Shown here: positions 7,746-22,999 of the stretch, piece after piece
How the letters are laid out: each line of letters opens with the position of its first letter
Numbering within the stretch: the stretch's first letter is position 1
Sequence record: MK250029.1
Strand: one strand, 5' to 3'
DNA: 64,000 nt
The notes under the pieces: generated by a model
The model's input: only the letters and a program-made list of their open reading frames with translations
Database searches by the model: none
What the model was told of the DNA's origin: nothing
Made by a program: the position numbers and the translations under genes

Positions 7746-7832
7746 TTTTAAACATATTTCTTATATTATTTATCTAAATTATTTTAAAAATTATTGTAAA
7801 TTAATAAATATTTTTATATTTATTTAAAATAA

Positions 7833-7868
7833 AAAAGAGACTTGTAAACTAAATACAAGTCTCTTTTA
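7833..7868. terminator. Intrinsic terminator hairpin
   Basis: aaaaaagagacttgta-aactaaa-tacaagtctctttt inverted repeat with A/T tracts. Similar hairpins at ~3313-3350, ~17908-17945 and ~62355-62390. Confidence 0.6.
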
Positions 7869-7871
7869 TTA

Positions 7872-8369
7872 TTAAATCTTTTTCTTCAAAATAGAATCTC
7901 TATATTTAACAGCCTCATCTTTTGTATAAAAAAGATTATTTGTTAATGCTCTCCATGAATCAGCTGCTGGATCTTTTCCAATATAAGATGATGAAGTCTG
8001 ACCAGATGAATTAATAAAATAATAGAATGTTACTGGTTTCAAACGATGATACCCAACTCTGGAAATCTCCTTATTTGCATATACCTCATGAAGGCTGCAG
8101 ATACCTGTGATATAATTAATATCTGTGATTCTATACAATCTTGTCTCATATAATACAATATCATCTATCTTAAAAGAAATATCTACACATTTCTTTACAA
8201 ACTTTGAATTTGAAATATCAAAATCAGAAATTTGTACACCATTTGGAAATGACGCAACTTTAGTTATTGCATTATAAGTAAAGATTGTATCCTTTTTCAG
8301 ATTACCGAATGGAAGATCAGCACTAAGGATATATTTCTTCTCTGTTGTCTTATTTTTCTTTGTATTCAT
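7872..8369 (-). CDS. Hypothetical protein
   Basis: 165-aa ORF directly downstream of a TAnnTTTG promoter motif. Confidence 0.6.
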   Translation of the reverse strand: MNTKKNKTTEKKYILSADLPFGNLKKDTIFTYNAITKVASFPNGVQISDFDISNSKFVKKCVDISFKIDDIVLYETRLYRITDINYITGICSLHEVYANKEISRVGYHRLKPVTFYYFINSSGQTSSSYIGKDPAADSWRALTNNLFYTKDEAVKYRDSILKKKI

Positions 8370-8400
8370 AATCTTTATTTTTTAATTGTTTATTATTTCA

Positions 8401-8440
8401 TTAACAATACAAAGATACATATTTTATTTGAAATAAAAAA
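8401..8440 (-). promoter_or_regulatory. Repeated Bacteroidota sigma-A-type promoter (-7 TAnnTTTG)
   Basis: Minus strand TTTTTTATTTCAAATAAAATATG-TATCTTTG-TATTGTTAA. Near-identical copies have the TATCTTTG core at 11842, 34302, 34416, 36735 and 44813, with a variant at ~20640. Confidence 0.7.
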
Positions 8441-8441
8441 A

Positions 8442-9935
8442 TTAATTAGGTAATTTCATAGGTAATTGTATAGCAGATGGGATATTCCATGCATTTGCTT
8501 TAATACCATTTGAATAACCAAATTTTATAATTCTATCATTTGCAATCTGCTCTTGTAATGATGATGATATATATCCATCTTTTGTTATATAATAAAGAAA
8601 TGACCTATTATCAGATATAACTACATCTTTTTTATTGGATATTGCTTTATCTAATTCACCATGTTCAGATTGATTTGGAAATTCTTGTGATTTAGAAATT
8701 AGTAATTGTGGATGTCCCGGATCACATATTTTCTTATAACCTGTATTTATATTAATTTCCATAAAATCATACATATATGGTAAATAAGACGGTAACCACA
8801 ATTTCCAAGCAGCATTTTCATTAATAAGCATAATAAAATCTTGTATCAATACAGATTTACCATCAGGTGATATGATCGATTTCAATGCTCTAACATTATT
8901 ATTAATTATATCAGATTTACTATATGAATCAGGAAGTTCATTAAACCATTCTGGCACAATTTTTAATCTATCATACCTTGTACCTTCATACCTAAATGTA
9001 TCTTTAACTATAAATTTTCCATTTTCATCTTTATCAGATAAATCATATGAAATAGTATAAGGTGATTTATAATTATTTTTTATACATTCATGATCAGGTA
9101 CAAATTTATCTACAATATTTGTCAAATTATGCCAGAAATCAGATGAGTATGAAGATAAACTAAATCTATGTAAATACTCATTTACTTTTTCTTTTGAAAA
9201 ATAATCTTGCTGTATTTCTGCAATTATACTAGATACTGATTTAAATACAAAACAATCACTATAATCTCGATTGTTATCATTATCATTATTAGCTATATAA
9301 TTATGACAATTATATAACCATGCATCTTCATCAACAGAAACAAATGCAAGTTTACTTACATATTTCTTATCAAACTCAGTGGATAATTTTACTTTACCAA
9401 TATATACGACATTACTATTACCTTTACATCTATATAACGTACCTGGTACTAAATCTTTTTCTTTAAATGAATTCTTAGTAAACATCTTTTCAGACATTTC
9501 ATTTGATTCAATATAATCTGTAGAATTTACAGGAAGCAGTACAAGTTCAGTACCATAATAACTATATACTAATTTACCTTTAATTTCTTTTTTATCAGTA
9601 TTACACCAATTTAATATATACAGTAAATTATCTATTGATATTTCAATTTCAAATCCACGCGGATCAAATATACGTGCGAATGTCATACGTTGTGACCATC
9701 TTTCACCACCTACTCGCTTATTTAATACAAAACCATCAATAGGTTCATTATCTATATATAACGGATCTATTTTCTGATCTCTCCATGAATTCCATGAAGC
9801 TTCTTTACGTAATTTATTCATTGCATCATAATAAATTACATAACCAATTTTTCCTGTATATGTATCAGATCTTTTATTAAATCCAACTGCTAGTTTTTTA
9901 GGAATAAAAAAACTATCTTCTTTTTTACCATTCAT
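8442..9935 (-). CDS. Hypothetical phage protein (497 aa)
   Basis: Long TAG-free ORF; no function recognised. Confidence 0.7.
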   Translation of the reverse strand: MNGKKEDSFFIPKKLAVGFNKRSDTYTGKIGYVIYYDAMNKLRKEASWNSWRDQKIDPLYIDNEPIDGFVLNKRVGGERWSQRMTFARIFDPRGFEIEISIDNLLYILNWCNTDKKEIKGKLVYSYYGTELVLLPVNSTDYIESNEMSEKMFTKNSFKEKDLVPGTLYRCKGNSNVVYIGKVKLSTEFDKKYVSKLAFVSVDEDAWLYNCHNYIANNDNDNNRDYSDCFVFKSVSSIIAEIQQDYFSKEKVNEYLHRFSLSSYSSDFWHNLTNIVDKFVPDHECIKNNYKSPYTISYDLSDKDENGKFIVKDTFRYEGTRYDRLKIVPEWFNELPDSYSKSDIINNNVRALKSIISPDGKSVLIQDFIMLINENAAWKLWLPSYLPYMYDFMEININTGYKKICDPGHPQLLISKSQEFPNQSEHGELDKAISNKKDVVISDNRSFLYYITKDGYISSSLQEQIANDRIIKFGYSNGIKANAWNIPSAIQLPMKLPN

Positions 9936-9941
9936 ATCTAA

Positions 9942-10472
9942 TTAAATTTTATTCTGTTCTCGTAATCGGTCTAATTGCTTATATGGTGAATCTGTTGAAT
10001 ATGATGTACCATGCATTTGTATTTTAAAACATTTACAATCTAATGATGGTGTATATACGTAATTTTTCTTTATACTTTTTTCTATATTATATAAATCACA
10101 ATTACTTTCATAAATTTTTCGTCTACAAAATATAATATCAGTTACAACAAATAATTTTGGAGATAATCCAAAATTATTTGGATACTTATCTAAATGTAAA
10201 TACCATGGCTGACCATAAAATGTTATTCGTTTAAAATCATCATACCATAAACCAGTATTTGTATCATAATTTGCATCAAATTCAGTTCTACATATTAACA
10301 TTAAAAAATACCTATCGTACTTATCAACCATAACAATGCCATTTGCAAAACGATATTCGGAATTGTTACTAGTACAACTTGTTAATACTTTACATTTAAA
10401 TAACATCCCTGGATGAATATCAATTTTTTTAATATCCGGTAATATCGTTTCTGTATAATTACTCATAATCAT
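9942..10472 (-). CDS. Hypothetical protein
   Basis: 176-aa ORF in a tightly packed run. Confidence 0.55.
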   Translation of the reverse strand: MIMSNYTETILPDIKKIDIHPGMLFKCKVLTSCTSNNSEYRFANGIVMVDKYDRYFLMLICRTEFDANYDTNTGLWYDDFKRITFYGQPWYLHLDKYPNNFGLSPKLFVVTDIIFCRRKIYESNCDLYNIEKSIKKNYVYTPSLDCKCFKIQMHGTSYSTDSPYKQLDRLREQNKI

Positions 10473-10929
10473 ATTTAAATTCTCTAAGAAAAATAGGAGT
10501 TAATTCATACTTTTTCCATCCATATAATTTATATTGATTACATCGTTTTTTGTTATCTAATGTAGTAATAGGTCTATCATATATAGCAACAATTTCTAAA
10601 TATTTTTTATCAAACCCGAAGTTTAACGTTGTTATATCAAGATTATTAGGATTATAATGGTGCCATATACTTTCTTTATTTACATCAATTATAAATGATC
10701 TACCCATTACCGGATCTGTAACAGATGTAAAACATATAAGAACTGCACCATTTTTATCTGTATACTTACTTATTATAAAAGTTTCAAAAGAAATATATAT
10801 ATTACTAAATCGTTCTGTTAAAAATTTTATAACAATAATAGAACCATTAGGTATATGACATAATGTAAATGTCCGTCCATCATGAATAGCAACATAACTA
10901 TCAATAATTTTCCTATTTGTTTTGTCCAT
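10459..10929 (-). CDS. Hypothetical protein
   Basis: 156-aa ORF in a tightly packed run. Confidence 0.55.
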   Translation of the reverse strand: MDKTNRKIIDSYVAIHDGRTFTLCHIPNGSIIVIKFLTERFSNIYISFETFIISKYTDKNGAVLICFTSVTDPVMGRSFIIDVNKESIWHHYNPNNLDITTLNFGFDKKYLEIVAIYDRPITTLDNKKRCNQYKLYGWKKYELTPIFLREFKYDYE

Positions 10930-10947
10930 AATTTTATATATAAAAAT

Positions 10948-11114
10948 AATGCAAAATATAACAAATTTAAATCCACATCATCTTATATTCACTTCAATCC
11001 ATGTTTCAATCTATAGGGACATTTGTTACATTTTTGAACGCAACAGGTATGATAAACATCCGCACTTCAATCAGATCCTATAAAACTTCGACGATAAACG
11101 TTATATCTTGCATT
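10948..11114 (-). ncRNA. Candidate structured ncRNA (long irregular hairpin)
   Basis: 15-bp closing stem AATGCAAGATATAAC/GTTATATTTTGCATT and inner TATAGG/CCTATA stem; GC-richer than the flanks. Confidence 0.35.
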
Positions 11115-11137
11115 TATAACTATTCAACTTTTCATAA

Positions 11138-11207
11138 TATAGTTTAAAGGATTCGAACCTTTTTCTCTGCTCTCACAGTGTGTTGCCACATACACCATTA
11201 AACTATA
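11138..11207 (-). pseudogene. Degenerate tRNA-like element
   Basis: TATAGTTT/AAACTATA acceptor, GTGT/ACAC D-stem and AAAGG-TTCGAAT-CCTTT T-arm, but the anticodon arm is collapsed. Confidence 0.45.
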
Positions 11208-11252
11208 CATTATAAATGTCATTGATATAGTTATATAAACATTAATTCTTAA

Positions 11253-11360
11253 TGTTATTAAAGTCAGATTCGAACTGACACCTCAGCAAGGAGATAATAC
11301 CACTATGGGGTAACAGAGCATCCCAAGGCACTGACCAACAAATTATGCCTATTTAACAAC
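11253..11360 (-). ncRNA. Aberrant tRNA-like RNA (9-bp acceptor, extended D-stem)
   Basis: GTTGTTAAA/TTTAATAAC, AGGCA/TGCCT and GTCAG-TTCGAAT-CTGAC; no canonical anticodon loop. Confidence 0.45.
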
Positions 11361-11417
11361 AAACTAATGTATTAATTAATAATTATATATTTTATATGTA
11401 TATTACTACATAAAGTT

Positions 11418-11801
11418 TTAATGCTTCAAGTTAAATTTTTCAAATATAGGCAATAAATCATCACTGAAATCAGTAAATAACTTCTGATATGTTTCCCATG
11501 CATCCATGGGTTTATCAGGTTTCGTAAATCTTGCAGATTCCCAATCGAGAATCGCCTCGTCAAAATGCATATGTTTTTTATATTTACGCAAATGATGTTT
11601 TGCAAATCTTGTATGTATTTTTTGTATTACTTTAGTTCCTAAAAATGGGAAAAATATATACATAAAAATTTTATCCAAATCATGAAAAGGATATTTATAA
11701 TAACCTATATATTTCTTTTCTAATTTCATTACCATAATATAATGTTTAAAACTATATGGTATATGTTTATATGATTTTTTTATATTTGTTATAATGTTCA
11801 T
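11418..11801 (-). CDS. HD-like domain protein
   Basis: FHDLDK...IHTRFAKHH...EAILDWESA; paralogous to 63437..63940. Confidence 0.5.
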   Translation of the reverse strand: MNIITNIKKSYKHIPYSFKHYIMVMKLEKKYIGYYKYPFHDLDKIFMYIFFPFLGTKVIQKIHTRFAKHHLRKYKKHMHFDEAILDWESARFTKPDKPMDAWETYQKLFTDFSDDLLPIFEKFNLKH

Positions 11802-11913
11802 TGTTAATTAAATTATTAATTACTTATTAAATTGTTATATACAAAGATACATATTTTATTCAAAATAAAAAAGTCACCAATAGGAATTTGACTTCTTATT
11901 AGTGACTTTATTT

Positions 11914-12153
11914 TTATTTCAAATATTTAAATATCTCGTGATATTTCTTTATATTTTCTTTAAAATGTTCAGTCGATATATTAGAATAATCTACATAATC
12001 ACCTTCTACGTAATAAAGATTATCATCAGATGAAAAATGTTTAAATCCATATTTATTAGCTTCATTTAAGGCTTCATCATCATCTTTTGCTTCAAATCTA
12101 TGATGGAAAAAGTGTCCATGATAATCTTCTAACTCTACTTCATATTTTCTCAT
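11914..12153 (-). CDS. Hypothetical protein
   Basis: 79-aa ORF, last gene of the operon. Confidence 0.5.
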   Translation of the reverse strand: MRKYEVELEDYHGHFFHHRFEAKDDDEALNEANKYGFKHFSSDDNLYYVEGDYVDYSNISTEHFKENIKKYHEIFKYLK

Positions 12154-12164
12154 AATAAAAATTA

Positions 12165-13031
12165 TTATTGTGTAATCATTTTATAAAGTAAATTCCACTT
12201 TTCCAATACTTGATCTGATGAACCTCCTGCACGCCATACATCTTTATCAAGACTTCCAAGATCATAATGTCTATATCGTCCGCAATCTGGTGAAATTTCG
12301 CCATATACAGTTTTACCATCTTCTGATATAAACAAACATAAGTCATATATTACAATATCTTTTTCTGCAAGAAAATCAGATAATACAGAAAATGTCATAG
12401 CTGCTGTTTTTCTTGCTTCTTTTACATCAATATAATAATCTGCTTGAGCATCACACATAACTTCATCTGCTAACATCTTATGTGTATCTGGTTCCCAAAA
12501 TGGATTTCTCCAATCAAAACGTACAATTGGTTCAGGATATGGTTCCATATCTTTAATTTCCATACCTGCATAATAAGGATGTGTTTTTCTTACGTGTGAT
12601 TTACCCATACCAAAATATCGGTGTTTACTTGTACCTGTATGATTTGCTTTAACTACAACTTCAATATTTGGTGCATCTTTAATTATACGAGCTAATACAA
12701 ATTCATCGCCATAATCAAGATATGCATGTTTAATACCATGTTCTTTAAGCAATTCACATAATACTTTACTTACATGTACACGAGGAATATTACTACCTTC
12801 TACAATACCTGTTCTATTATATGTAAATGAATAAATTGTAGGTTTAAAATAGATAATACAATATTCGTCATCTAATGCACGTATTTCTTTACTTTCACCT
12901 TCTACAACTAAAGGCATTTTTCTAAATGTTTCAAAATCAATAGAAAATAAGTCTTTAATATTCCATTTAGGATATAATACTGTTTTACAATATTCTATTG
13001 ATTTCAAATCTTCTTCTTGTATCTTATTCAT
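12165..13031 (-). CDS. purC: SAICAR synthetase (PurC)-like ATP-dependent ligase
   Basis: EGESKEI, PNIEVVVK, YDLCLF...GEISPDCGRYR, LDKDVWR motifs of the SAICAR synthetase fold. Confidence 0.8.
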   Translation of the reverse strand: MNKIQEEDLKSIEYCKTVLYPKWNIKDLFSIDFETFRKMPLVVEGESKEIRALDDEYCIIYFKPTIYSFTYNRTGIVEGSNIPRVHVSKVLCELLKEHGIKHAYLDYGDEFVLARIIKDAPNIEVVVKANHTGTSKHRYFGMGKSHVRKTHPYYAGMEIKDMEPYPEPIVRFDWRNPFWEPDTHKMLADEVMCDAQADYYIDVKEARKTAAMTFSVLSDFLAEKDIVIYDLCLFISEDGKTVYGEISPDCGRYRHYDLGSLDKDVWRAGGSSDQVLEKWNLLYKMITQ

Positions 13032-13037
13032 AAATTA

Positions 13038-13529
13038 TTACCAAGTTAAATTATTATCCTTAATATATTTCTCAACAACAGGAGGTACAAACTCTCCAAT
13101 AGGAAGTTTATAATGTACTAACTCTCTTACAAATGTAGATGAAATATCAATATTATAAGGTTCACAAAAGCCCATTACCAACATTGTTTCTACACCTGCT
13201 AAATAATGATTAGTTGCTGCCAAAGACTTTTCATATGTAAAATCTTCTGAATTTCTAATACCTCTAACAATATATGAAACATTATTTTTCTTACAATAAT
13301 CAGAAATTAATGTATCAGTCATATCAATTACTGTTACATTAGGATAATCCTTGAAAATTTCTTTAATTAACTTAATTCGCTCTGAACGTTTAATAAGCCC
13401 TTCACCTTTCTTTAAATTTGTTGCTAATGCAATAATAAATTCATCACATAATTTATATGTCTGATCTACAATTGCCTTATGCCCATTTGTAAATGGATCA
13501 AATGATCCAGGAAATATAAATTTCTTCAT
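13038..13529 (-). CDS. coaD: Phosphopantetheine adenylyltransferase (CoaD)-like nucleotidyltransferase
   Basis: FPGSFDPFTNGH, VRGIRNSEDFTYE, ISSTFVRE. Confidence 0.88.
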   Translation of the reverse strand: MKKFIFPGSFDPFTNGHKAIVDQTYKLCDEFIIALATNLKKGEGLIKRSERIKLIKEIFKDYPNVTVIDMTDTLISDYCKKNNVSYIVRGIRNSEDFTYEKSLAATNHYLAGVETMLVMGFCEPYNIDISSTFVRELVHYKLPIGEFVPPVVEKYIKDNNLTW

Positions 13530-13532
13530 CTT

Positions 13533-14183
13533 TTAATTTTCAATATTTTGTGAAACCCAAAGTCCTAATTGCTTTAATGCTTGCTTTCGATGACTCTTCA
13601 AATTTTTTCTTGCTGAATCTAATTCAGCATATGTTTTACCAAATGTATTATCTCCTACAAATATAGGATCATATCCAAATCCATTTGTACCTCTTAATTC
13701 ATCTAATATATATCCATATGAATATCCGCTAAACGTTTTTTCGATAATACCATTTTTTGCTATTGCAAAACATACTTCAAAATATGCAGATCGTTCATTA
13801 AATGGAATCTTTTTGATATATTGTAACAATTTCTCATTGTTAAGTCTATCATGTTCTGACTTATCTGTTGTAAACTCTTCATGCGGTACATTAGTAACAT
13901 TTAATTCATTATCTATTGTAACTTCATGAAAACGAGCTGAATATGGTCCCGGTAAATTATTCAATCCAGGAACAACTAAACCACTATCTTCTGCAATAAC
14001 ATATGTATCAGGATATTCTTTACTATATGCAGTTGCTTTAAGTATAGCATTATCTTTAATTGTTTTACCAGTCTCTTGAACATCTAATGCATGTGGTTCA
14101 ATTTCATATCCTAATGGACTTAAAATTGATGCAATCTCTCTAATTTTACCAGGATTACTTGTACCTACAATAATTTTACTCAT
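13533..14183 (-). CDS. rdgB: HAM1/RdgB non-canonical purine NTP pyrophosphatase
   Basis: GTSNPGK, ETGKTIKDNA.LKA, EDSGL, PGPYSARF, GFGYDPIF, SHR..AL. Confidence 0.9.
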   Translation of the reverse strand: MSKIIVGTSNPGKIREIASILSPLGYEIEPHALDVQETGKTIKDNAILKATAYSKEYPDTYVIAEDSGLVVPGLNNLPGPYSARFHEVTIDNELNVTNVPHEEFTTDKSEHDRLNNEKLLQYIKKIPFNERSAYFEVCFAIAKNGIIEKTFSGYSYGYILDELRGTNGFGYDPIFVGDNTFGKTYAELDSARKNLKSHRKQALKQLGLWVSQNIEN

Positions 14184-14644
14184 GATTTATTCATTATTTG
14201 TTTCTTAATAAAATCTCTTATAATTTCTATAATAGTTCCTGTACTATCATATGGTATTCTTGAAACTAAATATACATTACTATATTTTTTTTCTTTACAA
14301 TGATTATATAGTAACATAAATGATTTTCTATAATACTCTAAATCTTCTAATGTATGAAATTCTTCATCTAATGAATCTCCTCTTTTTTGTATTCTTTGTT
14401 GACAATGTTCTGGAAAATCATCTAAAATAATATATAAAGTATCATTATCAATATTATTATCGATGTAATCATACATTTTTTCTTCTGAATCTTTATTTAG
14501 TAATGTAGCTTTACTGAAAATACCTCTATCTTTAAATATACAATTATTAAAAAATTGTTTAATAAGATTAATTATATAAGTTTTACCAGTACCATCATTA
14601 CCGTCAAATTCAATATTAAACGTTAATTGTTTTTCTGTTTGCAT
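14180..14644 (-). CDS. P-loop nucleotide monophosphate kinase-like protein
   Basis: IEFDGNDGTGKT Walker A, DRG and CQQRIQKRG motifs of TMPK-like kinases. Confidence 0.65.
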   Translation of the reverse strand: MQTEKQLTFNIEFDGNDGTGKTYIINLIKQFFNNCIFKDRGIFSKATLLNKDSEEKMYDYIDNNIDNDTLYIILDDFPEHCQQRIQKRGDSLDEEFHTLEDLEYYRKSFMLLYNHCKEKKYSNVYLVSRIPYDSTGTIIEIIRDFIKKQIMNKS

Positions 14645-15261
14645 AAATTATAAACTTTTTGTATATTTGTTGGTAACCAGCAATCCATTAAACTAGCATG
14701 CTCAAATATACATGTATCAGTATTAATAATATTACTTAATATCTTTATGCCATTTGCTTTTAATGTTGCACCTGTTTCAACAACATCTATAATACAATCA
14801 GCACCAATATCGATATATCCTTCTGTTGAACCTGATGTATTCAATGTATAATATGGACAATGCATTTTATTTGTAAAATAATGCTTTGCTATTGTTTCAA
14901 ATTCAGTTGCACATATGATAGGATGTTTCAATGATGTTAATTCATCTAATGTCATTTTTGATGCTAAACATATTTGTACCTTATTTAAACCTGTATGTGA
15001 TACTAATTCTAATTCATTTTCATACTCGCTATTATTAACCATATCATAACCACATATACCAAATTCACAAAACTTACTTGCAATTAATTCTGGTATTGCT
15101 TTTGGTTTAGCTATAAATAATGCACAGTCATCTGACCAATCAGGAAAATAATATTTACGAGTATTTTCATCTGGCATATCAATATTACATTCATTAAATA
15201 ATGATTTAACTCCTGTATATAATCTACCTTTTGGTACAACTAATATTGGTTTATTATTCAT
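14623..15261 (-). CDS. hisG: ATP phosphoribosyltransferase, short form
   Basis: VPKGRL, GICGYD, CATEF, GSTEG, ADCIIDVVETGATLKANG. Confidence 0.88.
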   Translation of the reverse strand: MNNKPILVVPKGRLYTGVKSLFNECNIDMPDENTRKYYFPDWSDDCALFIAKPKAIPELIASKFCEFGICGYDMVNNSEYENELELVSHTGLNKVQICLASKMTLDELTSLKHPIICATEFETIAKHYFTNKMHCPYYTLNTSGSTEGYIDIGADCIIDVVETGATLKANGIKILSNIINTDTCIFEHASLMDCWLPTNIQKVYNLCKQKNN

Positions 15262-15709
15262 AATTATTTTTCTTTAAAATTCTTAGATTATCTCTATCTT
15301 TTAAAATAAAATTTGTAATCTCTTCAATTAAATATTTGTTATTAGTAGTCATATAGAAACATGTAGTTGAATCATCTCCTCTATGTTTATCCCAACCCTT
15401 TCTACCAAATTCAATTTTCAAATTATCTTTCTTAAATAAAAATCCAGGAAACCAATAATATACAAAACCTGAAAATGAATTTGTTTTCTTTACTTCACCA
15501 TTAGTTAACAATGCTAATTCATTTAAAAATTTTCTATATTGATAACTAAACATTCTCGCTGTATATGATGTAGTATTCCTAAAAATTAAATCATAATAAT
15601 TTTCATGACCAGTTGCATAAGATTTTCCTGATAAACTTACACATTCTATATGTTTCCCAAATATATTAATAATTTGCTTTACTATTTCATCTAATTCTGC
15701 ATTTACCAT
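15254..15709 (-). CDS. Hypothetical protein
   Basis: 151-aa ORF, overlapping or abutting its neighbours. Confidence 0.55.
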   Translation of the reverse strand: MVNAELDEIVKQIINIFGKHIECVSLSGKSYATGHENYYDLIFRNTTSYTARMFSYQYRKFLNELALLTNGEVKKTNSFSGFVYYWFPGFLFKKDNLKIEFGRKGWDKHRGDDSTTCFYMTTNNKYLIEEITNFILKDRDNLRILKKNNYE

Positions 15710-15711
15710 AA

Positions 15712-16395
15712 TTACTCTAATATTTTACATTCCTCTTCTGTATATCTCTTATGTAATTCAGTTAACCACCATTTTGTTTTAACTTTTACTTTAGGCATTC
15801 GTTGTCCCTTTAATAATGTTGATCGCCTAATTACTACACCTTCTTTTATATATGGATATTTACAATTAGTTTCAGTCCAATCATTATTTTGTATATCTTT
15901 AATAAAGTCATTAACTAATGGTCCTGTATAAACTAATTGAGGTAATTCAATACCACAATCTTTAAATAAATCCATATAAATTTTTGGTTCAATATATCCT
16001 TTCTTTTTTATAAATACATCAATTAATGCAAGATGCATATTATCTTTATCTTCTAATGAATGAAATCCTGCGAAACTATGTTCTCCATACCATTCAAAGA
16101 AAAATGTAATTTCATCAACACCAGAGAATACATCTTTTTTACATCTATGTTGTTCAACAATATTAGATAATATAGTTTCATAATTATGTGATTTAAAATA
16201 ACGTACAGCATCACCAAATTGTTCAGATGACTCATCTACCATACATTTTCTTGAACCAAAATTTGTGAACATCTTTTTCTTAACAGAATATTTAGCGCAG
16301 AAATTTTGTCCATCTAATTTATTAAATGCCCATACTTGTTCACCTAGTAATTCAGTATTATATTTTATATTATCTATTGAATCGTAATGTTTCAT
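15712..16395 (-). CDS. ATP-dependent RNA ligase (Rnl2-like)
   Basis: Motif I NKLDGQN, motif III FFEWYG, motif IV EGVVIR, motif V KVKTKWW. Confidence 0.75.
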   Translation of the reverse strand: MKHYDSIDNIKYNTELLGEQVWAFNKLDGQNFCAKYSVKKKMFTNFGSRKCMVDESSEQFGDAVRYFKSHNYETILSNIVEQHRCKKDVFSGVDEITFFFEWYGEHSFAGFHSLEDKDNMHLALIDVFIKKKGYIEPKIYMDLFKDCGIELPQLVYTGPLVNDFIKDIQNNDWTETNCKYPYIKEGVVIRRSTLLKGQRMPKVKVKTKWWLTELHKRYTEEECKILE

Positions 16396-16599
16396 GTAAT
16401 TATTTTAGTTTAACTTATTTTAGCAGAAGCATTTTTACATATATCAATGTGTTCTCCTTTATTATCTGTTATTAAATTTAAAATATATGACCACATCTCT
16501 TTATCTTCTAACCCATCTGTAATTATATCTATATCATAATTATCTGGTAATTCAAACTGTAAATGAATATCTAATTTTCTTTTCATAATTAACTCATTA

Positions 16600-17178
16600 T
16601 TAAATATTATCTAATTTACGACAATTATAACCTTGATCGTATGATAATTTTAAAAGTTCTGTAACTAACTTAATATCTTTTGTATTAGAATCTCTATATT
16701 TCTTAATTATTTGTTCAATGAAATAATTTCGTTTATTTGTATATTCAAGTAATTGTCTTGCATCATCAATTACTTCTTTCATACTTTCTAACTGATTTTC
16801 ATCTGTATAAACATTATTATACTCTTTACATTCTATAATACTACAATTTTCATCTTCATCTATATTATCTATATCATAATCTCCAATTACTGGAACCTTA
16901 TAACATGTATAAAATATAGTATGATTAAAAAGAGTTATTTCATACAAATATGAAATATCTCTTGCAACTTTATCATCTTCTTGTATATCATCATATGAAT
17001 CAAGAATTTGTTTTGTTAATGATTCATAATCATATTCTTCTACATTTTTTGAATATTTTTCTAATACTGCTTTTAAATCATCACCAGTACCACTGTCTGG
17101 ATAACCATCACAATGTCTATATAAAATATTGCGTCCTGTTATACCACTTTGAACTATAATATTACAACGTGTAGGCAT
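16600..17178 (-). CDS. Hypothetical phage protein
   Basis: 192-aa ORF with MPTRCNI...LYRHCDGYP start. Confidence 0.6.
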   Translation of the reverse strand: MPTRCNIIVQSGITGRNILYRHCDGYPDSGTGDDLKAVLEKYSKNVEEYDYESLTKQILDSYDDIQEDDKVARDISYLYEITLFNHTIFYTCYKVPVIGDYDIDNIDEDENCSIIECKEYNNVYTDENQLESMKEVIDDARQLLEYTNKRNYFIEQIIKKYRDSNTKDIKLVTELLKLSYDQGYNCRKLDNI

Positions 17179-17893: not shown

Positions 17894-17975
17894 TAATTAA
17901 AAACAATAAAGGTTAATAAGCATAAACACTTATTAACCTTTAATTTTTTATATGATAATAAAAATGAAAAAAATG

Positions 17976-18046
17976 TTGGGATAACAGGATTCGAACCTAT
18001 GATTACTGATCCAGAGTCAGTCGTATTACCACTATACTATATCCCA
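17976..18046 (-). tRNA. tRNA-Gln(CTG)
   Basis: TGGGATA/TATCCCA acceptor; ACTGA-CT CTG GA-TCAGT; GGTTCGAATCC. Confidence 0.92.
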
Positions 18047-18459
18047 ATAAAATCTATAAGCTTACTATACTATATATTTATTATATATCGTTTTGGATTT
18101 ATGAGTTAATAAGATTTATTATACCAAAAACATTATTTTCATAAACAACCACATTTATTATTTACCGGTATGTGTTTCATTCACCTATTAATATATACGT
18201 AATATATTAATAACATCTGGGTACTCTTTATTACTAATAAACAATGTTCCTATTTTATCATCTTAATAGAAGTAAATATGAAATTATTTTAATTATCTTC
18301 ATATAACAATAAAACAGAAGATATTTTCAAATCATTAAAATAATCTATTTACTAATGTCAATTGCATTCTTTATTTGTGCACTATTTATAATGCAATAAT
18401 CTCTCATTAAGGAACGAACTTATAGACCACTACATCTTTAAATCTGTTGTGGATTTTTG

Positions 18460-18544
18460 CGGAGAGCAGTGGTCCCGACCCACATTCACATACATGAACA
18501 AGCAATTTAGCAGATTGTCCCTAACCCCGTTAGGTTTACTCTCC
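18460..18544 (-). tRNA. tRNA-Ser(GCT), atypical T-loop
   Basis: GGAGAGT/GCTCTCC; ACAAT-CT GCT AA-ATTGC; long variable arm; T-loop GTCGGGA. Confidence 0.8.
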
Positions 18545-18625
18545 AAATTGATTAATAAATTATATCAATCAATTTTATTTACTATATTTATAGTATATTA
18601 TAATCAAAAAGTTTACTTTTTATCA

Positions 18626-18970
18626 CTAAAAATATAATATAATTTTATTATCAGTTGATTCTTGCCGATATTCACATCTATAACCATATGTGTAAATAAG
18701 TAATGATATAAATTGTTGAATCCATTGTTTATAACAATCTTCTGCTGGTATACTATGTTTTTTTGTTAACATTGCAACCATAGTTAATTCTGATATGATA
18801 CAATACGTACTTCCTTTTGCTACAGCATCTTTAAGTTTTTCATTTACATAATCAATAATAACATCACCACGTCTTAAAAATGATTGATTTGCTTCATATG
18901 CAATAGAATTACGTAATTCTGTAGCTTTTGGAATTATAATATCACTTTTCTTCTGTTTAAATTTTATCAT
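18626..18970 (-). CDS. Hypothetical protein
   Basis: 114-aa ORF. Confidence 0.5.
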   Translation of the reverse strand: MIKFKQKKSDIIIPKATELRNSIAYEANQSFLRRGDVIIDYVNEKLKDAVAKGSTYCIISELTMVAMLTKKHSIPAEDCYKQWIQQFISLLIYTYGYRCEYRQESTDNKIILYF

Positions 18971-19336
18971 TGAAAATTTTCATATTTATCCTTTAATTGT
19001 TGAAGTCTTCTATAATTCGTATACAATACATTTGCATCACCACTAGTAGGATTATTCACCAATTTATAATAATCTAATTCTGCCTGTAAATATTCAGATT
19101 TTGCTATTTGGTAATCTGCTTCTTTATAAGCATTGAATAAATCTGGTTCATATTGTTCAAGTGAATCACCATATTTTTCTTCTGTTACATTATTAATTAA
19201 TGAAACTCTCGAATCATTAAATATATGGTGTTGAAAATCTTCAGTTATATTTGAAGATTCTTTTTTTATTATTTCATCCTTTTTATTAATTACATATATA
19301 ACATACTATTTAGATGAAAAAAGTAATTTAATTAAT

Positions 19337-19708
19337 TTAAAAATGTTCATCTTCATTTAAAATAAATTTCGTACAATCTCGCGTTTTATATAGAAATTCT
19401 TTTGCCGCTTCATATGATAAAAAATAATTTGAAACTAATTCTTTGTCAATTCCAGTACATACTATCTGGTTATCAGTTTTCATTAAAAAATCGCGAAAAA
19501 ATGGTAAAATACTGAAGTAATTCCAGTAAATTTTGTAATATTTTATATGTTTTCCTAAACCTATATCAAATTCATCAACATATTTAATAGTATACTCAAT
19601 TGGACCAAAAATATTAAATATTTTCTTAATTTGTATATCTCTATCATATGTTAATGATATTAGGTACATATAAAAAAATGTGAATATTAATATATTTGTA
19701 ATCATCAC
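19337..19708 (-). CDS. Hypothetical protein with N-terminal hydrophobic segment
   Basis: 123-aa ORF. Confidence 0.5.
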   Translation of the reverse strand: MMITNILIFTFFYMYLISLTYDRDIQIKKIFNIFGPIEYTIKYVDEFDIGLGKHIKYYKIYWNYFSILPFFRDFLMKTDNQIVCTGIDKELVSNYFLSYEAAKEFLYKTRDCTKFILNEDEHF

Positions 19709-19847
19709 AATTCATTTTCTAAATTTTCTAATTTTATCTCTAACAACCTTATCCTGTTTTCTTGTGTTAAAATAATAGTTTTTAACTTATTAATAGAATC
19801 AATAATTTCATTTATCTTATCATATAATTGTTTTTCTTGCTCATTAC

Positions 19848-20159
19848 TCATATTATTATCTTATCATTTAAAATATCATCAACTATATTAACTAATATAG
19901 GGCAAACACAATTATAATAATCAAAGTCTTTTTCAAAAGAAATATCATTATTAGAAAAATCCTTATATAATTGTAAAAGAATAAATGCAACATATTTATT
20001 AAATGGACGATCAGTGATATTATATGATGAAATATTACGTAATATTTCATATACACTTTCTGCATCCATATAAGTATCCAACTCTTTTACATATTTAACT
20101 ATATTATTTTGAATCTGAATAATATAATTATTTATATTTGAATTATTTATAGTTATCAT
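19848..20159 (-). CDS. Hypothetical protein
   Basis: 103-aa ORF. Confidence 0.5.
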   Translation of the reverse strand: MITINNSNINNYIIQIQNNIVKYVKELDTYMDAESVYEILRNISSYNITDRPFNKYVAFILLQLYKDFSNNDISFEKDFDYYNCVCPILVNIVDDILNDKIII

Positions 20160-20164
20160 ATTTC

Positions 20165-20377
20165 TTACTCTTCAATAAATTTTTTAATTGTTTTTGCCAT
20201 ATCAATAATTCTATCAAATTCATATCGGTCTCTATTAGCCTTCTCTGAATTTGCCCAATACATTGTATAAATCAATGCACGATCAGCTGCAGGTAACTTA
20301 CCAAAGTTATCGTCATTGATTAAATCATCAAATTTATTGTTCTTAAACTTAATATTTTTAGTTTCATTTGTATTCAT
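20165..20377 (-). CDS. Hypothetical protein
   Basis: 70-aa ORF. Confidence 0.5.
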   Translation of the reverse strand: MNTNETKNIKFKNNKFDDLINDDNFGKLPAADRALIYTMYWANSEKANRDRYEFDRIIDMAKTIKKFIEE

Positions 20378-20399
20378 ATAATTTATATATCAATTTATA

Positions 20400-20612
20400 T
20401 TATTTGTTTTCATTATTATTAATAACTTTAAACTTATCAGTATCAGGAATAATGGCTAAACTACCCCATGTTCCATGAAGCTGTCCAATACTATCGATAA
20501 ATTGAACAACACCTTCACGTCCAATATATGAGTTTACAACTGTATCATAACCACAATCATCAACCCATAAAATTTTAATAGTATCTCCTATCTTTACGTT
20601 TTCTTGTTCCAT
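20400..20612 (-). CDS. DUF4314-like small protein
   Basis: IGDTIKI..DD...G.EGVVQFIDSIGQLHGTWGSLAIIPDTDKF pattern. Confidence 0.6.
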   Translation of the reverse strand: MEQENVKIGDTIKILWVDDCGYDTVVNSYIGREGVVQFIDSIGQLHGTWGSLAIIPDTDKFKVINNNENK

Positions 20613-20694
20613 AACAAATCTTATTTAAACATTATATAACGAAGATACATATTTTATATTAAAAAAGAAAGGATACTAACTTAAATTAGTATCC

Positions 20695-21081
20695 TTAATA
20701 TATTTTCCACTATTCAAAATGATTTCTTGTATCTAAATAAAATAAATTAGTTTCATTCTTATATGCTTCCTGTTCAAATGATATATTTCTATATGCTTTA
20801 TGCGAAAATCTATCTTTTGTAAATAATACACGCCATAACCATTCAAAGAAATATATTATATAGAATATAATACCACCTATATACTATTGAAGACACAATG
20901 GTAAAAAACATGCAAAATCTTTCATTTGTTCAGTATGTATAGACTCATGATTTAATATTTTTTCTTTATATCTAAGAATCTATAATTTATATGCATATTC
21001 TTTTCTGACAAATAATGTACCGAAAAGATTAATAGCAATAAAACCCTATACCGGTATAATACTATTATAAACAATTTTCAT
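20695..21081 (-). CDS. Membrane protein with HExxH motif (128 aa, code 15)
   Basis: ATG 21081 to TAA 20695 with 4 TAG. FIAINLFGTLF, NHESIHTEQ, ISFEQEAY and a hydrophobic segment. Confidence 0.6.
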
Positions 21082-21098
21082 TTTATTAAATTATCCTT

Positions 21099-21833
21099 TT
21101 AATTATTTATTACTTGTTCTGTTTTTAACTCAATAATTATATCTTCTTTTATAAATAAAACATTATTATCATCTATATCTAAATATTCAATATTTTTAAT
21201 AGTATTCACAAAATTATGAACAAACGTATTTAATATAGATATATCTGTATCTTCTATTCTAAATAGAAATTTAGATAATTCTGGATATGCTAATGATATT
21301 TCTTTCTTTGTAAAATATTCATCACCATTTATTAAGCCTAAACATTGTCCAGATTGAAATGCAATTAATTTTAATATATCTTCTTTTGACATATTATTAT
21401 TTAATGTTGTGAAATCTATTGTTGTTAAATCAATATTTAATAATGTATTTAATCTACAATCAAAGTCACTACGTAATGCGAGTTTTACTTCTGATCTATA
21501 TTGAGATCTAGATAAATGAGATAAAATAGAACGTATAGAGCGTACTATCTTTAATGGTATATTGCGTTTTACATTTTTTGTAATTAATAAAGGAGTAGTC
21601 TGATGATGTAAAGAATATGTATTTTTAATAGCATTATTTAATTCATCTTTTGTTCCTTTATAACAATTAGAAATAATACCATCATCAATAGTTATTAAAT
21701 TTCTATTTTCATTTTTATCAGATGAACAAAATATCTTACATTCATTTAATGACGATAATTTATCTACAATATATGCTATGTCTATATCAGTTGAATCAGA
21801 TGAACCATATATATAATTTCCATATATTTCCAT
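21099..21833 (-). CDS. Pol-beta-superfamily nucleotidyltransferase-like protein
   Basis: YIYGSSDSTDIDIAYIV (hG[GS]..DxD) motif. Confidence 0.6.
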   Translation of the reverse strand: MEIYGNYIYGSSDSTDIDIAYIVDKLSSLNECKIFCSSDKNENRNLITIDDGIISNCYKGTKDELNNAIKNTYSLHHQTTPLLITKNVKRNIPLKIVRSIRSILSHLSRSQYRSEVKLALRSDFDCRLNTLLNIDLTTIDFTTLNNNMSKEDILKLIAFQSGQCLGLINGDEYFTKKEISLAYPELSKFLFRIEDTDISILNTFVHNFVNTIKNIEYLDIDDNNVLFIKEDIIIELKTEQVINN

Positions 21834-21838
21834 TTTAA

Positions 21839-22998: not shown

Positions 22999-22999
22999 A

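What the first reader, a model, noticed from the sequence alone, without database searches (positions are those of the whole stretch)
12165..16395. Uncharacterised nucleotide operon: RNA ligase-hyp-hisG-NMP kinase-HAM1-coaD-purC
Seen: abutting or overlapping TAG-free genes. Established: these enzymes belong to unrelated host pathways (His, CoA, purine, NTP sanitation), and only one step of each is present. Inferred: a repurposed pathway making or removing a non-standard nucleotide, with PRTase, amino-acid ligase, kinase, adenylyltransferase and pyrophosphatase steps, in the manner of modified-base clusters. Alternatives are ZMP/ZTP control or an immune-signal mimic; for example, PR-ATP cyclised by a nucleotidyltransferase would chemically give N1-cADPR. 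These hypotheses are speculative.
Basis: partly seen in the sequence, partly recalled or inferred. Interest (0 to 1): 0.78.

Follow-up and report, generated by a model that had tools for sequence, protein, structure and literature searches.

The report
Viral histidine-branch pathway for an unusual nucleotide
Four of the seven genes in this Lak megaphage cluster form a gene set that recurs, often fused, in huge phages, giant viruses and tiny or predatory bacteria, and it probably turns ATP into an unusual purine-like nucleotide of unknown role, possibly a blocker of host enzymes that destroy ATP.

Summary
The window is Prevotella megaphage Lak-C1. Seven abutting or overlapping minus-strand genes lie at 12165-16395, inside a longer TAG-free block (7872-17178).

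The seven genes are not one unit. The conserved core is short-form HisG, a truncated dTMP-kinase-like kinase, a HAM1/RdgB pyrophosphatase and a divergent PurC-like protein. This core recurs in other huge phages, giant-virus MAGs, CPR bacteria, Myxococcota, Bdellovibrionota, Planctomycetota and Acidobacteriota.

Fusions link the parts: Kin+HisG, Kin+HAM1, PurC-like+HAM1+Kin, HisG+Kin+PurC-like, and one 1235-aa PurC-like+HisA+HisIE+HisG reading frame. Sixteen loci add HisA, HisI and usually HisE. CPR carriers were not found to have hisD or, in four of five, canonical purC.

The RNA ligase, the 151-aa protein and CoaD were found only in Lak-type phages.

Best reading (inferred, 0.4): ATP and PRPP are taken through PR-ATP to PRFAR, and the PurC-like enzyme converts PRFAR as CofB/PenC do in coformycin and pentostatin synthesis. 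The kinase keeps the product phosphorylated and HAM1 clears ITP/dITP. A role against ATP-deaminase defences is speculative.

No reductase was found. Orthology to CofB could not be tested. Some CPR genomes lack HisA/I or HisG.

The parts
15712..16395 (-). ATP-dependent RNA ligase-like protein (227 aa, adenylyltransferase domain only). Lak-lineage accessory gene, not part of the conserved core.
   Evidence: phrog_548 'RNA ligase', 1.8e-13. Ligase motifs are visible in the translation: KLDG, EGVVIR, KVKTK. Homologues at 26-35% identity in other huge phages. No PDB sequence match. Absent from non-Lak module loci. A non-orthologous PF09414 ligase lies near the module in L073 and L074.
15254..15709 (-). 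151-aa protein of unknown function. It overlaps the HisG start by 8 nt and is restricted to Lak-type phages.
   Evidence: Only 8 relatives among 1.84 billion representatives. AF2 pLDDT 80.7. No significant fold match; class II aaRS cores recur only at Z 4-4.8. No family hits.
14623..15261 (-). Short-form ATP phosphoribosyltransferase (HisG, 212 aa). First enzyme of the conserved module.
   Evidence: TIGR00070, 116.7 bits against a cut-off of 75.75. PRPP loop DVVETGATL is present. Syntenic with or fused to the kinase and the PurC-like protein in 19 non-Lak module loci and in giant-virus ORFs. 73% identical between Lak-C1 and Lak-B.
14180..14644 (-). Truncated dTMP-kinase-like P-loop kinase (154 aa). 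Core module member and presumed NMP kinase for the pathway product.
   Evidence: Family alignment A2 has invariant DGNDGxGK and DRG motifs. The profile's best PDB match is thymidylate kinase 2pbr, 3.9e-10. Fused to HisG, HAM1 or the PurC-like protein in other genomes.
13533..14183 (-). RdgB/HAM1-type non-canonical purine NTP pyrophosphatase (216 aa). Core module member.
   Evidence: TIGR00042, 151.2 against 145.35. Catalytic motifs are intact: SNPGK, AEDSGL, GYDPIF, SHR. Adjacent to or fused with the PurC-like protein in 25 non-Lak loci.
13038..13529 (-). Pantetheine-phosphate adenylyltransferase-like nucleotidyltransferase (CoaD, 163 aa), inserted into the module only in Lak phages.
   Evidence: TIGR01510, 133 against 103.3. 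Motifs TNGH, RGIRxxxDFxYE and ISST are present. 97.5% identical between Lak-C1 and Lak-B. At most 46% identical to any cellular homologue; the best named one is a Bacteroidales PPAT at 43%. Absent from other module loci.
12165..13031 (-). Divergent PurC-like (SAICAR-synthetase-fold) enzyme (288 aa). It is the hub of the module.
   Evidence: TIGR00081, only 27 bits against 189.9. SAICAR-synthetase fold. Member of a very conserved family: 55-78% identity across phages and several bacterial phyla; motifs VRFDWRNP and HSGTSKHRY. It forms a clade separated from canonical PurC by a long stem, support 100/97.
7872..17178 (-). TAG-free co-directional gene block that contains the cluster. It can be translated in the standard code.
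   Evidence: Thirteen consecutive ORFs of at least 100 aa have no in-frame TAG, while flanking ORFs carry 1-19.
17907..17942 (-). Terminator-like hairpin upstream of the block.
   Evidence: Consensus scan: 4 sites found against 1.4 expected. This is a pattern match only.
7833..7867 (-). Terminator-like hairpin directly after the last TAG-free gene.
   Evidence: Consensus scan. This is a pattern match only.

Best explanation
The core of the cluster (HisG, dTMP-kinase-like kinase, HAM1, PurC-like) is a self-standing pathway that branches off the first steps of histidine synthesis.

Proposed steps:
1. HisG condenses ATP (or dATP) with PRPP to PR-ATP.
2. PR-ATP is trimmed to PR-AMP by HisE or HAM1.
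3. HisI opens the ring and HisA isomerises the product to PRFAR. In Lak the host Prevotella must supply these steps; many relatives encode a HisA-HisI-HisE fusion.
4. The PurC-like enzyme takes PRFAR, as the SAICAR-synthetase homologues CofB and PenC do in coformycin and pentostatin synthesis. It gives a ring-expanded (1,3-diazepine, 8-oxo-coformycin-type) or otherwise rearranged purine nucleoside 5'-phosphate.
5. The actinomycete clusters dephosphorylate and export this product. Here the dedicated NMP kinase instead keeps it inside the cell as a di- or triphosphate.
6. HAM1 removes ITP, dITP and XTP. In some relatives endonuclease V and PurA deal with inosine in nucleic acids and with IMP.

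The most likely use is to block adenine-nucleotide deaminases and so protect the ATP/dATP pool of an AT-rich virus. The targets could be host catabolic enzymes or defence deaminases of the RADAR RdrB, Cad1 or Kongming KomA kind.

What is shown: the gene identities, the conserved synteny, the fusions, and that late histidine and canonical purine genes were not found in the small-genome carriers tested. What is inferred: the substrate (PRFAR), the product chemistry, the order of the kinase and HAM1 steps, and the biological role.
For: **One pathway**
- The same four genes lie together in non-Lak loci from phages and five or more bacterial phyla. Of 32 module-type loci, 19 carry HisG, 25 HAM1 and 23 the kinase.
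- Fusions: Kin+HisG (L013, L019); Kin+HAM1 (L014, L015, L074); PurC-like+HAM1+Kin in one frame (L023, L028); PurC-like+guanylate kinase (P0195, P0215).
- Giant-virus MAG ORFs of 595-811 aa combine HisG, kinase and PurC-like. A 1235-aa viral ORF combines PurC-like, HisA, HisIE and HisG.

**Branch at PRFAR**
- Sixteen loci carry HisA with HisI, and usually HisE, next to HisG and the PurC-like gene.
- CPR genomes with the module had no hisD (0 of 5). In the four of five with any HisA match, the module's copy was the only one. Four of five lacked canonical purC.
- Large-genome carriers have a separate canonical purC.

**Precedent**
- HisG homologues (PenA, AdeC), a HisA homologue (AdeK) and SAICAR-synthetase homologues (PenC, CofB, AdeA) are the signature of pentostatin, coformycin and adechlorin clusters.
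- That CofB converts PRFAR is my own recollection of Ren et al. 2020 PNAS, which could not be read here.

**The PurC-like protein is not housekeeping PurC**
- 27 bits against a 189.9 cut-off. It lies in a separate, well-supported clade.

**Inosine theme**
- The genes inserted inside the module in different lineages are HAM1, endonuclease V (L014, L074) and PurA (six CPR loci).

**Plausible targets**
- Cad1 (ATP to ITP) was characterised from a Bacteroidales bacterium. RADAR and Kongming also act through adenine deamination. Coformycin 5'-phosphate is described as an AMP deaminase inhibitor.

**Selection and expression**
- The PurC-like protein is 93% and HAM1 90% identical between Lak-C1 and Lak-B, although the region is only 84% identical in nucleotides.
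- The block is TAG-free. Contigs from four RNA libraries cover it, which does not prove transcription.
Against: - No short-chain reductase (CofA/PenB equivalent) appears among the conserved neighbours. A true coformycin, with an 8-hydroxyl, would need a host reductase. The product may instead be the 8-oxo form, which I recall as a much weaker adenosine deaminase inhibitor.
- No CofB or PenC sequence could be obtained, so orthology of this PurC-like family with them is untested.
- The nearest sister clade sits in mixed contexts. One is a Bradyrhizobium phosphonate cluster with PEP mutase, where plain amide-ligase chemistry is as likely.
- A related operon type (L072, L058, L055) holds a second, more canonical-like PurC and an FmdA/AmdA amidase. 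This hints at different or longer chemistry.
- In three Saccharibacteria genomes with kinase, PurC-like and HAM1, no HisG, HisA or HisIE was found. In three other CPR genomes with HisG, no HisA or HisIE was found. Either these MAGs are incomplete or PRFAR is not the universal substrate.
- A kinase and an NTP pyrophosphatase in one pathway look futile unless they act on different nucleotides.
- Nothing here links the module to any defence system. There are no PADLOC hits.
Confidence: 0.4

Rival explanations
1. Purine interconversion or alarmone pathway. The module converts adenine nucleotides, through histidine-type intermediates, into AICAR (ZMP), FAICAR or IMP. PurA or a guanylate kinase then return these to usable A or G nucleotides. 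Alternatively it builds and trims ZTP: the kinase makes it and HAM1 removes it. The PurC-like enzyme would cleave or re-close the PRFAR amidine rather than expand the ring.
For: - PurA lies beside the module in six CPR loci.
- Guanylate-kinase fusions to the PurC-like protein exist, and an ATP/ADP translocase and an FmdA/AmdA amidase lie in the L072-type operon.
- CPR carriers lack de novo purine genes.
- Kinase, PurC-like and HAM1 occur together without HisG in Saccharibacteria.
- From my own knowledge, the histidine pathway is a classical route from adenine to guanine nucleotides through AICAR.
Against: - No PurH, GuaA, GuaB or PurB was seen in the modules. None was specifically searched for.
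- A deaminase would do the same job in one step.
- A 25%-GC phage has little need to convert A into G.
- No precedent is known for a PurC-fold enzyme releasing AICAR from PRFAR.
Confidence: 0.25
2. Modified-base pathway for the virus's own nucleic acid. This would follow the T4 logic (dCTPase, hydroxymethylase, dNMP kinase) or the Z-genome logic (MazZ, PurZ). A pyrophosphatase supplies the monophosphate, the base is rebuilt at that level, and a dedicated kinase returns it to the pool for incorporation into DNA, tRNA or RNA.
For: - The trio of NTP pyrophosphatase, base-rebuilding enzyme and dedicated NMP kinase matches that logic (my own knowledge of the T4 and PurZ systems).
- The module occurs in huge phages and giant viruses.
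- RNA ligase genes of two unrelated kinds, a Tpt1 gene and a tRNA array lie near the module in phages.
Against: - The same module sits in ordinary chromosomal contexts in Myxococcota, Acidobacteriota and Planctomycetota. A genome-wide base replacement is unlikely there.
- No dedicated polymerase and no enzyme that removes the canonical competitor is linked to it.
- Endonuclease V and HAM1 argue for keeping odd purines out of nucleic acid.
Confidence: 0.1
3. Unconnected auxiliary metabolic genes. Each enzyme does its textbook job (histidine, purine, CoA, NTP cleaning, tRNA repair) to boost the infected cell, and the adjacency reflects only shared early expression.
For: - HisG, HAM1 and CoaD score above the curated family cut-offs and keep their catalytic motifs.
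- PPAT genes are annotated in other jumbo phages.
- Huge phages are known to carry many nucleotide-metabolism genes.
Against: - The four core genes are syntenic and repeatedly fused across viruses and distant bacteria.
- Carriers without histidine or purine pathways still keep them.
- The PurC-like protein and the kinase fall far below their family cut-offs.
- Short-form HisG alone cannot raise histidine output without the other nine steps.
Confidence: 0.1
4. Immune-signal mimic or sink. PR-ATP made by HisG is cyclised by the CoaD-type nucleotidyltransferase to N1-cADPR or a related ADP-ribose signal, which interferes with TIR/Thoeris-type defence.
For: The idea is chemically conceivable. CoaD is inserted inside the module in Lak and is the most conserved protein of the cluster (97.5% between Lak-C1 and Lak-B).
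Against: - CoaD is absent from every non-Lak module.
- It keeps all PPAT substrate and ATP motifs and passes the PPAT cut-off.
- The idea explains neither the PurC-like protein, the kinase, HAM1 nor the HisA/HisI fusions.
- No defence-family hit.
Confidence: 0.03

Closest known systems
Pentostatin, coformycin and adechlorin biosynthetic clusters of actinomycetes (PenA/AdeC = HisG homologue; AdeK = HisA homologue; PenC/CofB/AdeA = SAICAR-synthetase homologue; PenB/CofA = short-chain reductase)
   Same: A HisG homologue is paired with a non-housekeeping PurC homologue, sometimes with a dedicated HisA, outside histidine and purine synthesis. The early histidine intermediates are used as a scaffold for a nucleotide analogue.
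   Different: - No reductase is linked here.
- A dedicated NMP kinase and a HAM1 pyrophosphatase are core members here and are unknown in those clusters.
- There is no phosphatase or export logic. The sister clade of the PurC-like family does pair with HAD phosphatases.
- The carriers are viruses, CPR and predatory bacteria rather than actinomycetes.
- Sequence orthology with CofB/PenC is untested.
Early histidine biosynthesis (HisG, HisE, HisI, HisA)
   Same: The enzyme families and their order are the same. HisG passes the curated equivalog cut-off, and the fused HisA-HisIE proteins score as HisA and HisIE.
   Different: No HisF, HisH, HisB, HisC or HisD is linked. hisD was not found in five CPR carriers. 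No HisZ partner for the short-form HisG was found. The Lak genome encodes HisG only.
Phage nucleotide-rebuilding cassettes (T4 dCTPase / dCMP hydroxymethylase / dNMP kinase; PurZ-MazZ-DatZ of Z-genome phages). From my own knowledge; not tested here.
   Same: The architecture matches: an NTP pyrophosphatase, an enzyme that alters the base at the monophosphate level, and a dedicated NMP kinase. A homologue of a purine-synthesis enzyme is recruited, PurZ from PurA there and the PurC-like protein from PurC here.
   Different: The enzyme families differ. The module is also chromosomal in free-living bacteria. There is no evidence that the product enters DNA.
RdgB/HAM1/ITPA house-cleaning pyrophosphatases
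   Same: The score is above the TIGR00042 cut-off and the catalytic motifs are intact.
   Different: Here the enzyme is an obligate neighbour or fusion partner of a PurC-like enzyme and a kinase. It also carries an insertion of about 40 residues relative to the model, which matches in two stretches.
Phage counter-measures that act on host metabolites, for example enzymes depleting dAMP against Kongming
   Same: The proposed role is also a small-molecule route to neutralise a nucleotide-based defence.
   Different: No experimental or genomic link to any defence system was found. The role is inferred from the inosine-related accessory genes only.

Membership tests
Coformycin/pentostatin-type pathway | HisG homologue co-located with a SAICAR-synthetase homologue that is not the housekeeping PurC | tested here: met
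   HisG at 14623-15261 and the PurC-like gene at 12165-13031 are in one block. The PurC-like protein scores 27 bits against 189.9 and lies in a separate clade. The pairing is conserved in 19 non-Lak module loci.
Coformycin/pentostatin-type pathway | Supply of PRFAR through HisE, HisI and HisA | tested here: inconclusive
   Not encoded in the Lak-type genome searched, so the phage would depend on its host. Encoded as a HisA-HisI(-HisE) fusion in 16 related loci. Not found in six CPR genomes.
Coformycin/pentostatin-type pathway | Linked short-chain dehydrogenase (CofA/PenB) that reduces the 8-oxo intermediate | tested here: not met
   No conserved neighbour family other than HisA-IE, HisG, HAM1, the kinase and PurA. 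None was found in the Lak block. The search was by neighbour clustering, not by an SDR profile.
Coformycin/pentostatin-type pathway | Orthology of the PurC-like enzyme with CofB, PenC or AdeA | not testable with these tools
   No actinomycete sequence could be fetched. The genome-collection scan found no Actinomycetota locus. There was no hit in the plasmid collection, no NCBIfam model for the family and no PDB entry.
Coformycin/pentostatin-type pathway | Product is a 1,3-diazepine nucleoside or nucleotide | not testable with these tools
   This needs enzymology and mass spectrometry.
Canonical SAICAR synthetase (PurC) | Score above the curated equivalog cut-off, and a role in de novo purine synthesis | tested here: not met
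   TIGR00081 scores 27 bits against 189.9. Carriers with large genomes have a separate canonical purC. Four of five CPR carriers have none. The fold is shared.
ATP phosphoribosyltransferase (HisG) of histidine synthesis | Curated cut-off and PRPP-binding loop | tested here: met
   116.7 bits against 75.75; the DVVETGATL loop is present.
ATP phosphoribosyltransferase (HisG) of histidine synthesis | Works within a complete histidine pathway; the short form is paired with HisZ | tested here: not met
   No hisA or hisIE in the Lak-type genome searched. No hisD in CPR carriers. No HisZ was recognised. The 151-aa neighbour gave only weak resemblance to class II aaRS cores and no verdict in the complex test.
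RdgB/HAM1 non-canonical purine NTP pyrophosphatase | Curated cut-off and catalytic motifs | tested here: met
   TIGR00042 scores 151.2 against 145.35. The SNPGK, AEDSGL, GYDPIF and SHR motifs are present.
Pantetheine-phosphate adenylyltransferase (CoaD) | Curated cut-off; T/HxGH, RGxR...DFxYE and ISST motifs | tested here: met
   TIGR01510 scores 133 against 103.3 and the motifs are present. Substrate specificity was not tested.
Thymidylate kinase | Curated cut-off and a full NMP-binding and lid region | tested here: not met
   24 bits against 83.25. The family profile matches TMK 2pbr at 3.9e-10, but the protein is about 50-70 residues shorter. The P-loop and DRx motifs are kept.
ATP-dependent RNA ligase (Rnl2 / PF09414-like) | Nucleotidyltransferase motifs I, III, IV and V | tested here: met
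   KLDG, FEWYG, EGVVIR and KVKTK are in the translation. phrog_548, 1.8e-13. No C-terminal domain is present. Activity was not tested.
Known anti-phage defence or counter-defence families (PADLOC) | Profile match to a catalogued system | tested here: not met
   Only two marginal P-loop hits, for the kinase (E about 0.004); nothing for the other eight proteins scanned.

The most novel reading that the evidence does not exclude
Viruses of bacteria (Lak and other huge phages) and of eukaryotes (giant-virus MAGs), together with episymbiotic and predatory bacteria, share a so far undescribed pathway. It rebuilds ATP, through PRFAR, into a new ring-expanded or rearranged purine nucleoside triphosphate. 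The product would be used inside the cell as an ATP-like transition-state inhibitor of adenine-nucleotide deaminases, or as a new nucleotide cofactor or building block.
Probability: 0.3. Interest if true: 0.92.

Novelty: new variant of a known kind. Interest (0 to 1): 0.8.

Why it matters
If the model holds, a histidine-branch pathway known only from actinomycete antibiotic clusters has a much wider, intracellular version. That version is carried by the largest phages of the human and animal gut, by giant viruses and by the smallest bacteria.

It would add a small-molecule, nucleotide-level strategy to the ways viruses protect their ATP/dATP supply. It could also name a natural inhibitor class for the ATP-deaminase defences (RADAR, Cad1, Kongming), whose viral counter-measures are barely known.

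Whatever the product, the fused viral proteins (HisG-kinase-PurC-like; PurC-like-HisA-HisIE-HisG) are ready-made single-polypeptide pathways. The product can be identified with standard enzymology. The PurC-like family currently has no dedicated NCBIfam model and is labelled SAICAR synthetase or hypothetical in public annotation.

Tried and rejected
- **CofB/PenC sequences.** I could not obtain any. The genome-collection scan found no Actinomycetota locus. The plasmid search gave nothing. A homologue search from the Bradyrhizobium relative gave no actinomycete names. No NCBIfam model exists. Ren et al. 2020 and Xu et al. 2018 are not held.
- **A wasted literature search.** One search matched 'pencil'.
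- **Bradyrhizobium neighbourhood.** I first read it as formycin/pyrazofurin-like because of a MetRS-like gene. I rejected this: it is a phosphonate cluster with PEP mutase and a PhnY-like hydroxylase.
- **The 151-aa protein.** Only Lak-type relatives exist. Foldseek and VIA-align gave nothing significant. The idea that it is a minimal HisZ-like partner of HisG stays a weak lead. The complex prediction of HisG with this protein returned no verdict and is no evidence either way. It is not related to the ORF in the same position in phage L073.
- **Lak and L073 RNA ligases.** They are not orthologous.
- **Single-sequence searches.** Scans of viral contigs with single proteins found only Lak relatives; an alignment was needed. 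PDB sequence searches for the ligase and the kinase alone gave nothing useful.
- **Defence families.** PADLOC gave no match.
- **Promoters.** The sigma-70 scan gave fewer sites than the shuffles and says nothing here.
- **RNA libraries.** Contigs cover the cluster but cannot show transcription, strand or operon structure.

Full report
**Identity of the window.** The region 12165-16395 is 100% identical to Prevotella phage Lak-C1 (MK250029.1), 99.4% to Lak-A and 84% to Lak-B. The window is about 25% G+C and carries 19 tRNA genes between 17975 and 35097. Lak phages are published as alternatively coded megaphages. The main texts of the two Lak papers I searched do not mention a phosphoribosyltransferase, RNA ligase, purine or pantetheine gene.

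**Observation.**
- Seven minus-strand ORFs occupy exactly the stated interval, abutting or overlapping. All start with ATG and end in TAA or TGA.
- Read with TAG as sense, 37 of 76 ORFs of at least 100 aa in the window contain in-frame TAG. The 13 consecutive ORFs of at least 100 aa from 7872 to 17178 contain none.
- The cluster is therefore part of a longer block readable in the standard code. Terminator-like hairpins at 17942-17907 and 7867-7833 flank it; these are pattern matches only.
HisG, HAM1 and CoaD are above curated cut-offs. The kinase and PurC are far below them. The RNA ligase is supported by a PHROG and by its motifs. The 151-aa protein has no hit.
- The remaining block genes that were scanned have no informative hits.

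**The PurC-like protein is the key.**
- It has a SAICAR-synthetase fold (AF2 pLDDT 89.7; only PurC structures match) but scores 27 bits against the PurC cut-off of 189.9.
- It belongs to a very conserved family, 55-78% identical between Lak, other phages and bacteria of several phyla.
- In a maximum-likelihood tree the family is separated from canonical PurC by a long, well-supported stem. The phage sequences form one clade nested among bacterial members, none of them from Bacteroidota.
- Large-genome carriers have a separate canonical purC. Four of five CPR carriers have none.

**Conserved module.**
- I fetched the surroundings of family members from assemblies, reference genomes and viral contigs. 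I searched them with the Lak proteins.
- Of 32 non-Lak loci with a module-type PurC-like gene, 19 carry HisG, 25 a HAM1 and 23 a dTMP-kinase-like kinase within the fetched flank. Several loci are cut by contig ends.
- The Lak RNA ligase, the 151-aa protein, CoaD and the two flanking small genes have no counterpart in any of these loci.
- Fusions tie the core together:
  - Kin+HisG (L013, L019).
  - Kin+HAM1 (L014, L015, L074).
  - PurC-like+HAM1+Kin in one frame (L023, L028), and PurC-like+HAM1 (L032).
  - PurC-like+guanylate kinase (P0195, P0215).
  - In giant-virus MAGs and another viral contig, single ORFs of 595-811 aa with HisG, kinase and PurC-like.
  - A 481.7-kb viral contig with a 1235-aa ORF that combines PurC-like, HisA, HisIE and HisG.
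- The kinase family is a shortened relative of thymidylate kinase, with invariant DGNDGxGK and DRG motifs.

**Link to the histidine pathway.**
- Sixteen loci carry HisA with HisI, and usually HisE, mostly as one protein of about 420 aa directly upstream of HisG.
- Five CPR genomes with the module had no hisD. In the four with any HisA match, the module's copy was the only one.
- The first four histidine steps therefore exist there without the rest of the pathway and next to the PurC-like gene. This places the PurC-like enzyme downstream of HisA, on PRFAR.
- Lak-type genomes appear to encode only HisG. A 553.7-kb Lak-type record that carries the cluster (the nearest record held, rated 100% complete; the window's own assembly is not held) has no hisA, hisIE or purA. 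The remaining steps would come from Prevotella.

**Precedent.**
- The literature held here describes HisG homologues (PenA, AdeC), a HisA homologue (AdeK), SAICAR-synthetase homologues (PenC, CofB, AdeA) and a short-chain reductase (PenB, CofA). These are the signature of pentostatin, coformycin and adechlorin clusters.
- From memory, CofB cyclises PRFAR to 8-oxo-coformycin 5'-phosphate (Ren et al. 2020, not readable here). I mark this step as own knowledge.
- The actinomycete pathway ends with reduction, dephosphorylation and export of a nucleoside.
- The viral/CPR module has no linked reductase or phosphatase. It has a dedicated NMP kinase and an ITPase-type pyrophosphatase instead, so its product probably stays in the cell as a nucleotide.
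- The sister clade of the PurC-like family is paired or fused with HAD phosphatases, which sharpens this contrast. Its contexts are mixed, however, and one is a phosphonate cluster.

**Role.**
- The genes inserted inside the module in different lineages all deal with deaminated adenine: HAM1 (ITP/dITP/XTP), endonuclease V in two phages, and PurA in six CPR loci.
- A coformycin-type nucleotide would block adenine-nucleotide deaminases.
- Such enzymes drive the RADAR, Cad1 and Kongming defences. Cad1 was characterised from a Bacteroidales bacterium. Coformycin 5'-phosphate is cited as an AMP-deaminase inhibitor.
- Protecting the ATP/dATP pool of a 25%-GC virus is therefore a coherent reading, whether against host catabolism or against defence. 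It is inference only. No defence-family match exists.

**Weak points.**
- No reductase was found.
- Orthology with CofB is untested.
- The L072/L058/L055 operon type has a second PurC and an amidase.
- In three Saccharibacteria genomes with kinase, PurC-like and HAM1, no HisG, HisA or HisIE was found. In three other CPR genomes with HisG, no HisA or HisIE was found.
- These are MAGs, but the pattern may mean that PRFAR is not the only substrate. For this reason the purine-interconversion/ZMP rival keeps 0.25.

**Lak-specific genes.**
- CoaD keeps all PPAT motifs and is 97.5% identical between Lak-C1 and Lak-B. It is at most 46% identical to cellular homologues. It may be a genuine PPAT, or it may adenylylate the pathway product. 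Nothing supports the N1-cADPR idea.
- The RNA ligase has relatives in other huge phages. A non-orthologous ligase lies near the module in two other phages, so a link to RNA repair is possible but unproven.
- The 151-aa protein remains unexplained.

**Conservation and expression.**
- Identities between Lak-C1 and Lak-B:

| Protein | Identity (%) |
|---|---|
| CoaD | 97.5 |
| PurC-like | 93.1 |
| RNA ligase | 91.6 |
| HAM1 | 89.8 |
| 151-aa protein | 78.7 |
| HisG | 73.0 |
| Kinase | 57.9 |

- Contigs from four metatranscriptomic libraries (three studies) cover the cluster at about 97-98% identity. This is compatible with transcription but does not prove it.

**Novelty.** No paper in the searched library joins ATP phosphoribosyltransferase or SAICAR synthetase with huge phages, giant viruses or CPR. 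I rate the finding as a new variant of a known kind (histidine-branch nucleotide-analogue synthesis), with a real chance of a new nucleotide.

Noticed in passing
window 7872-17178: A run of 13 consecutive minus-strand ORFs of at least 100 aa has no in-frame TAG. It is flanked by ORFs with 1-19 in-frame TAGs and bracketed by terminator-like hairpins (17942-17907 and 7867-7833). It looks like a standard-code, possibly early, transcription unit in a TAG-recoded phage.
   Followed up: partly
window 17975-35097: Nineteen tRNA genes lie on the minus strand just upstream of the block, including three tRNA-Met and several unusually long ones (Ser 91 nt, Trp 92 nt, Arg 89 nt). No suppressor tRNA for TAG was called in this window.
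   Followed up: no
window 8442-9935: A 497-aa protein in the same TAG-free block matches phrog_2475 (unknown function) at 2.4e-64 over its N-terminal half. It has no NCBIfam or PADLOC hit.
   Followed up: no
L075-L079, L081-L083 (giant-virus MAG and other IMG/VR contigs), about 6540-8970: Single ORFs of 595-811 aa combine HisG, a dTMP-kinase-like P-loop domain and the PurC-like domain. The module therefore also exists in viruses of eukaryotes, as one polypeptide.
   Followed up: partly
L084:7212-10916 (481.7-kb viral contig, 28% GC): A 1235-aa ORF has an unassigned N-terminal 260 residues, then PurC-like, HisA, HisI/HisE and HisG. This is nearly the whole proposed pathway in one reading frame.
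   Followed up: partly
L072:2955-9299; same order in L058 and L055: A different operon type: ATP/ADP translocase, HisA, HisIE, HisG, a second more canonical-like PurC (95 bits), an FmdA/AmdA amidase, and PurC-like fused to guanylate kinase. It suggests longer or different chemistry in this clade.
   Followed up: partly
L048:4165-17635 (Bradyrhizobium chromosome): A distant PurC-like relative (38% identity) sits in a phosphonate natural-product cluster: PEP mutase, PhnY-like hydroxylase, MetRS-like ligase, PLP aminotransferase, P450 and HAD phosphatase.
   Followed up: partly
L073:4085-4762 and L074:247-987: Two other phages carry a PF09414 RNA ligase a few kb upstream of their HisG-Kin-HAM1-PurC-like module. 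It is not orthologous to the Lak ligase (BLASTP E 0.14). L014 has a Tpt1 RNA 2'-phosphotransferase and an RlaP gene nearby.
   Followed up: partly
window 13458-15255 (RNA-library run X4); protein P0244: One contig joins 13458 to 15255 with 36 other letters between. This would remove most of HisG, the kinase and HAM1. A 138-aa database protein (P0244) matches both CoaD and the C-terminus of the 151-aa protein. It may be a natural deletion or rearrangement variant, or an assembly artefact (the shorter side of the joint is only 24 nt).
   Followed up: no
L071:8437-10807 (536-kb contig, 66% GC, mostly small unknown ORFs): A minimal trio of HisG, a HisA+HisI fusion (no HisE) and the PurC-like gene, without HAM1 or the kinase beside it, in what looks like another very large mobile element or phage.
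   Followed up: no
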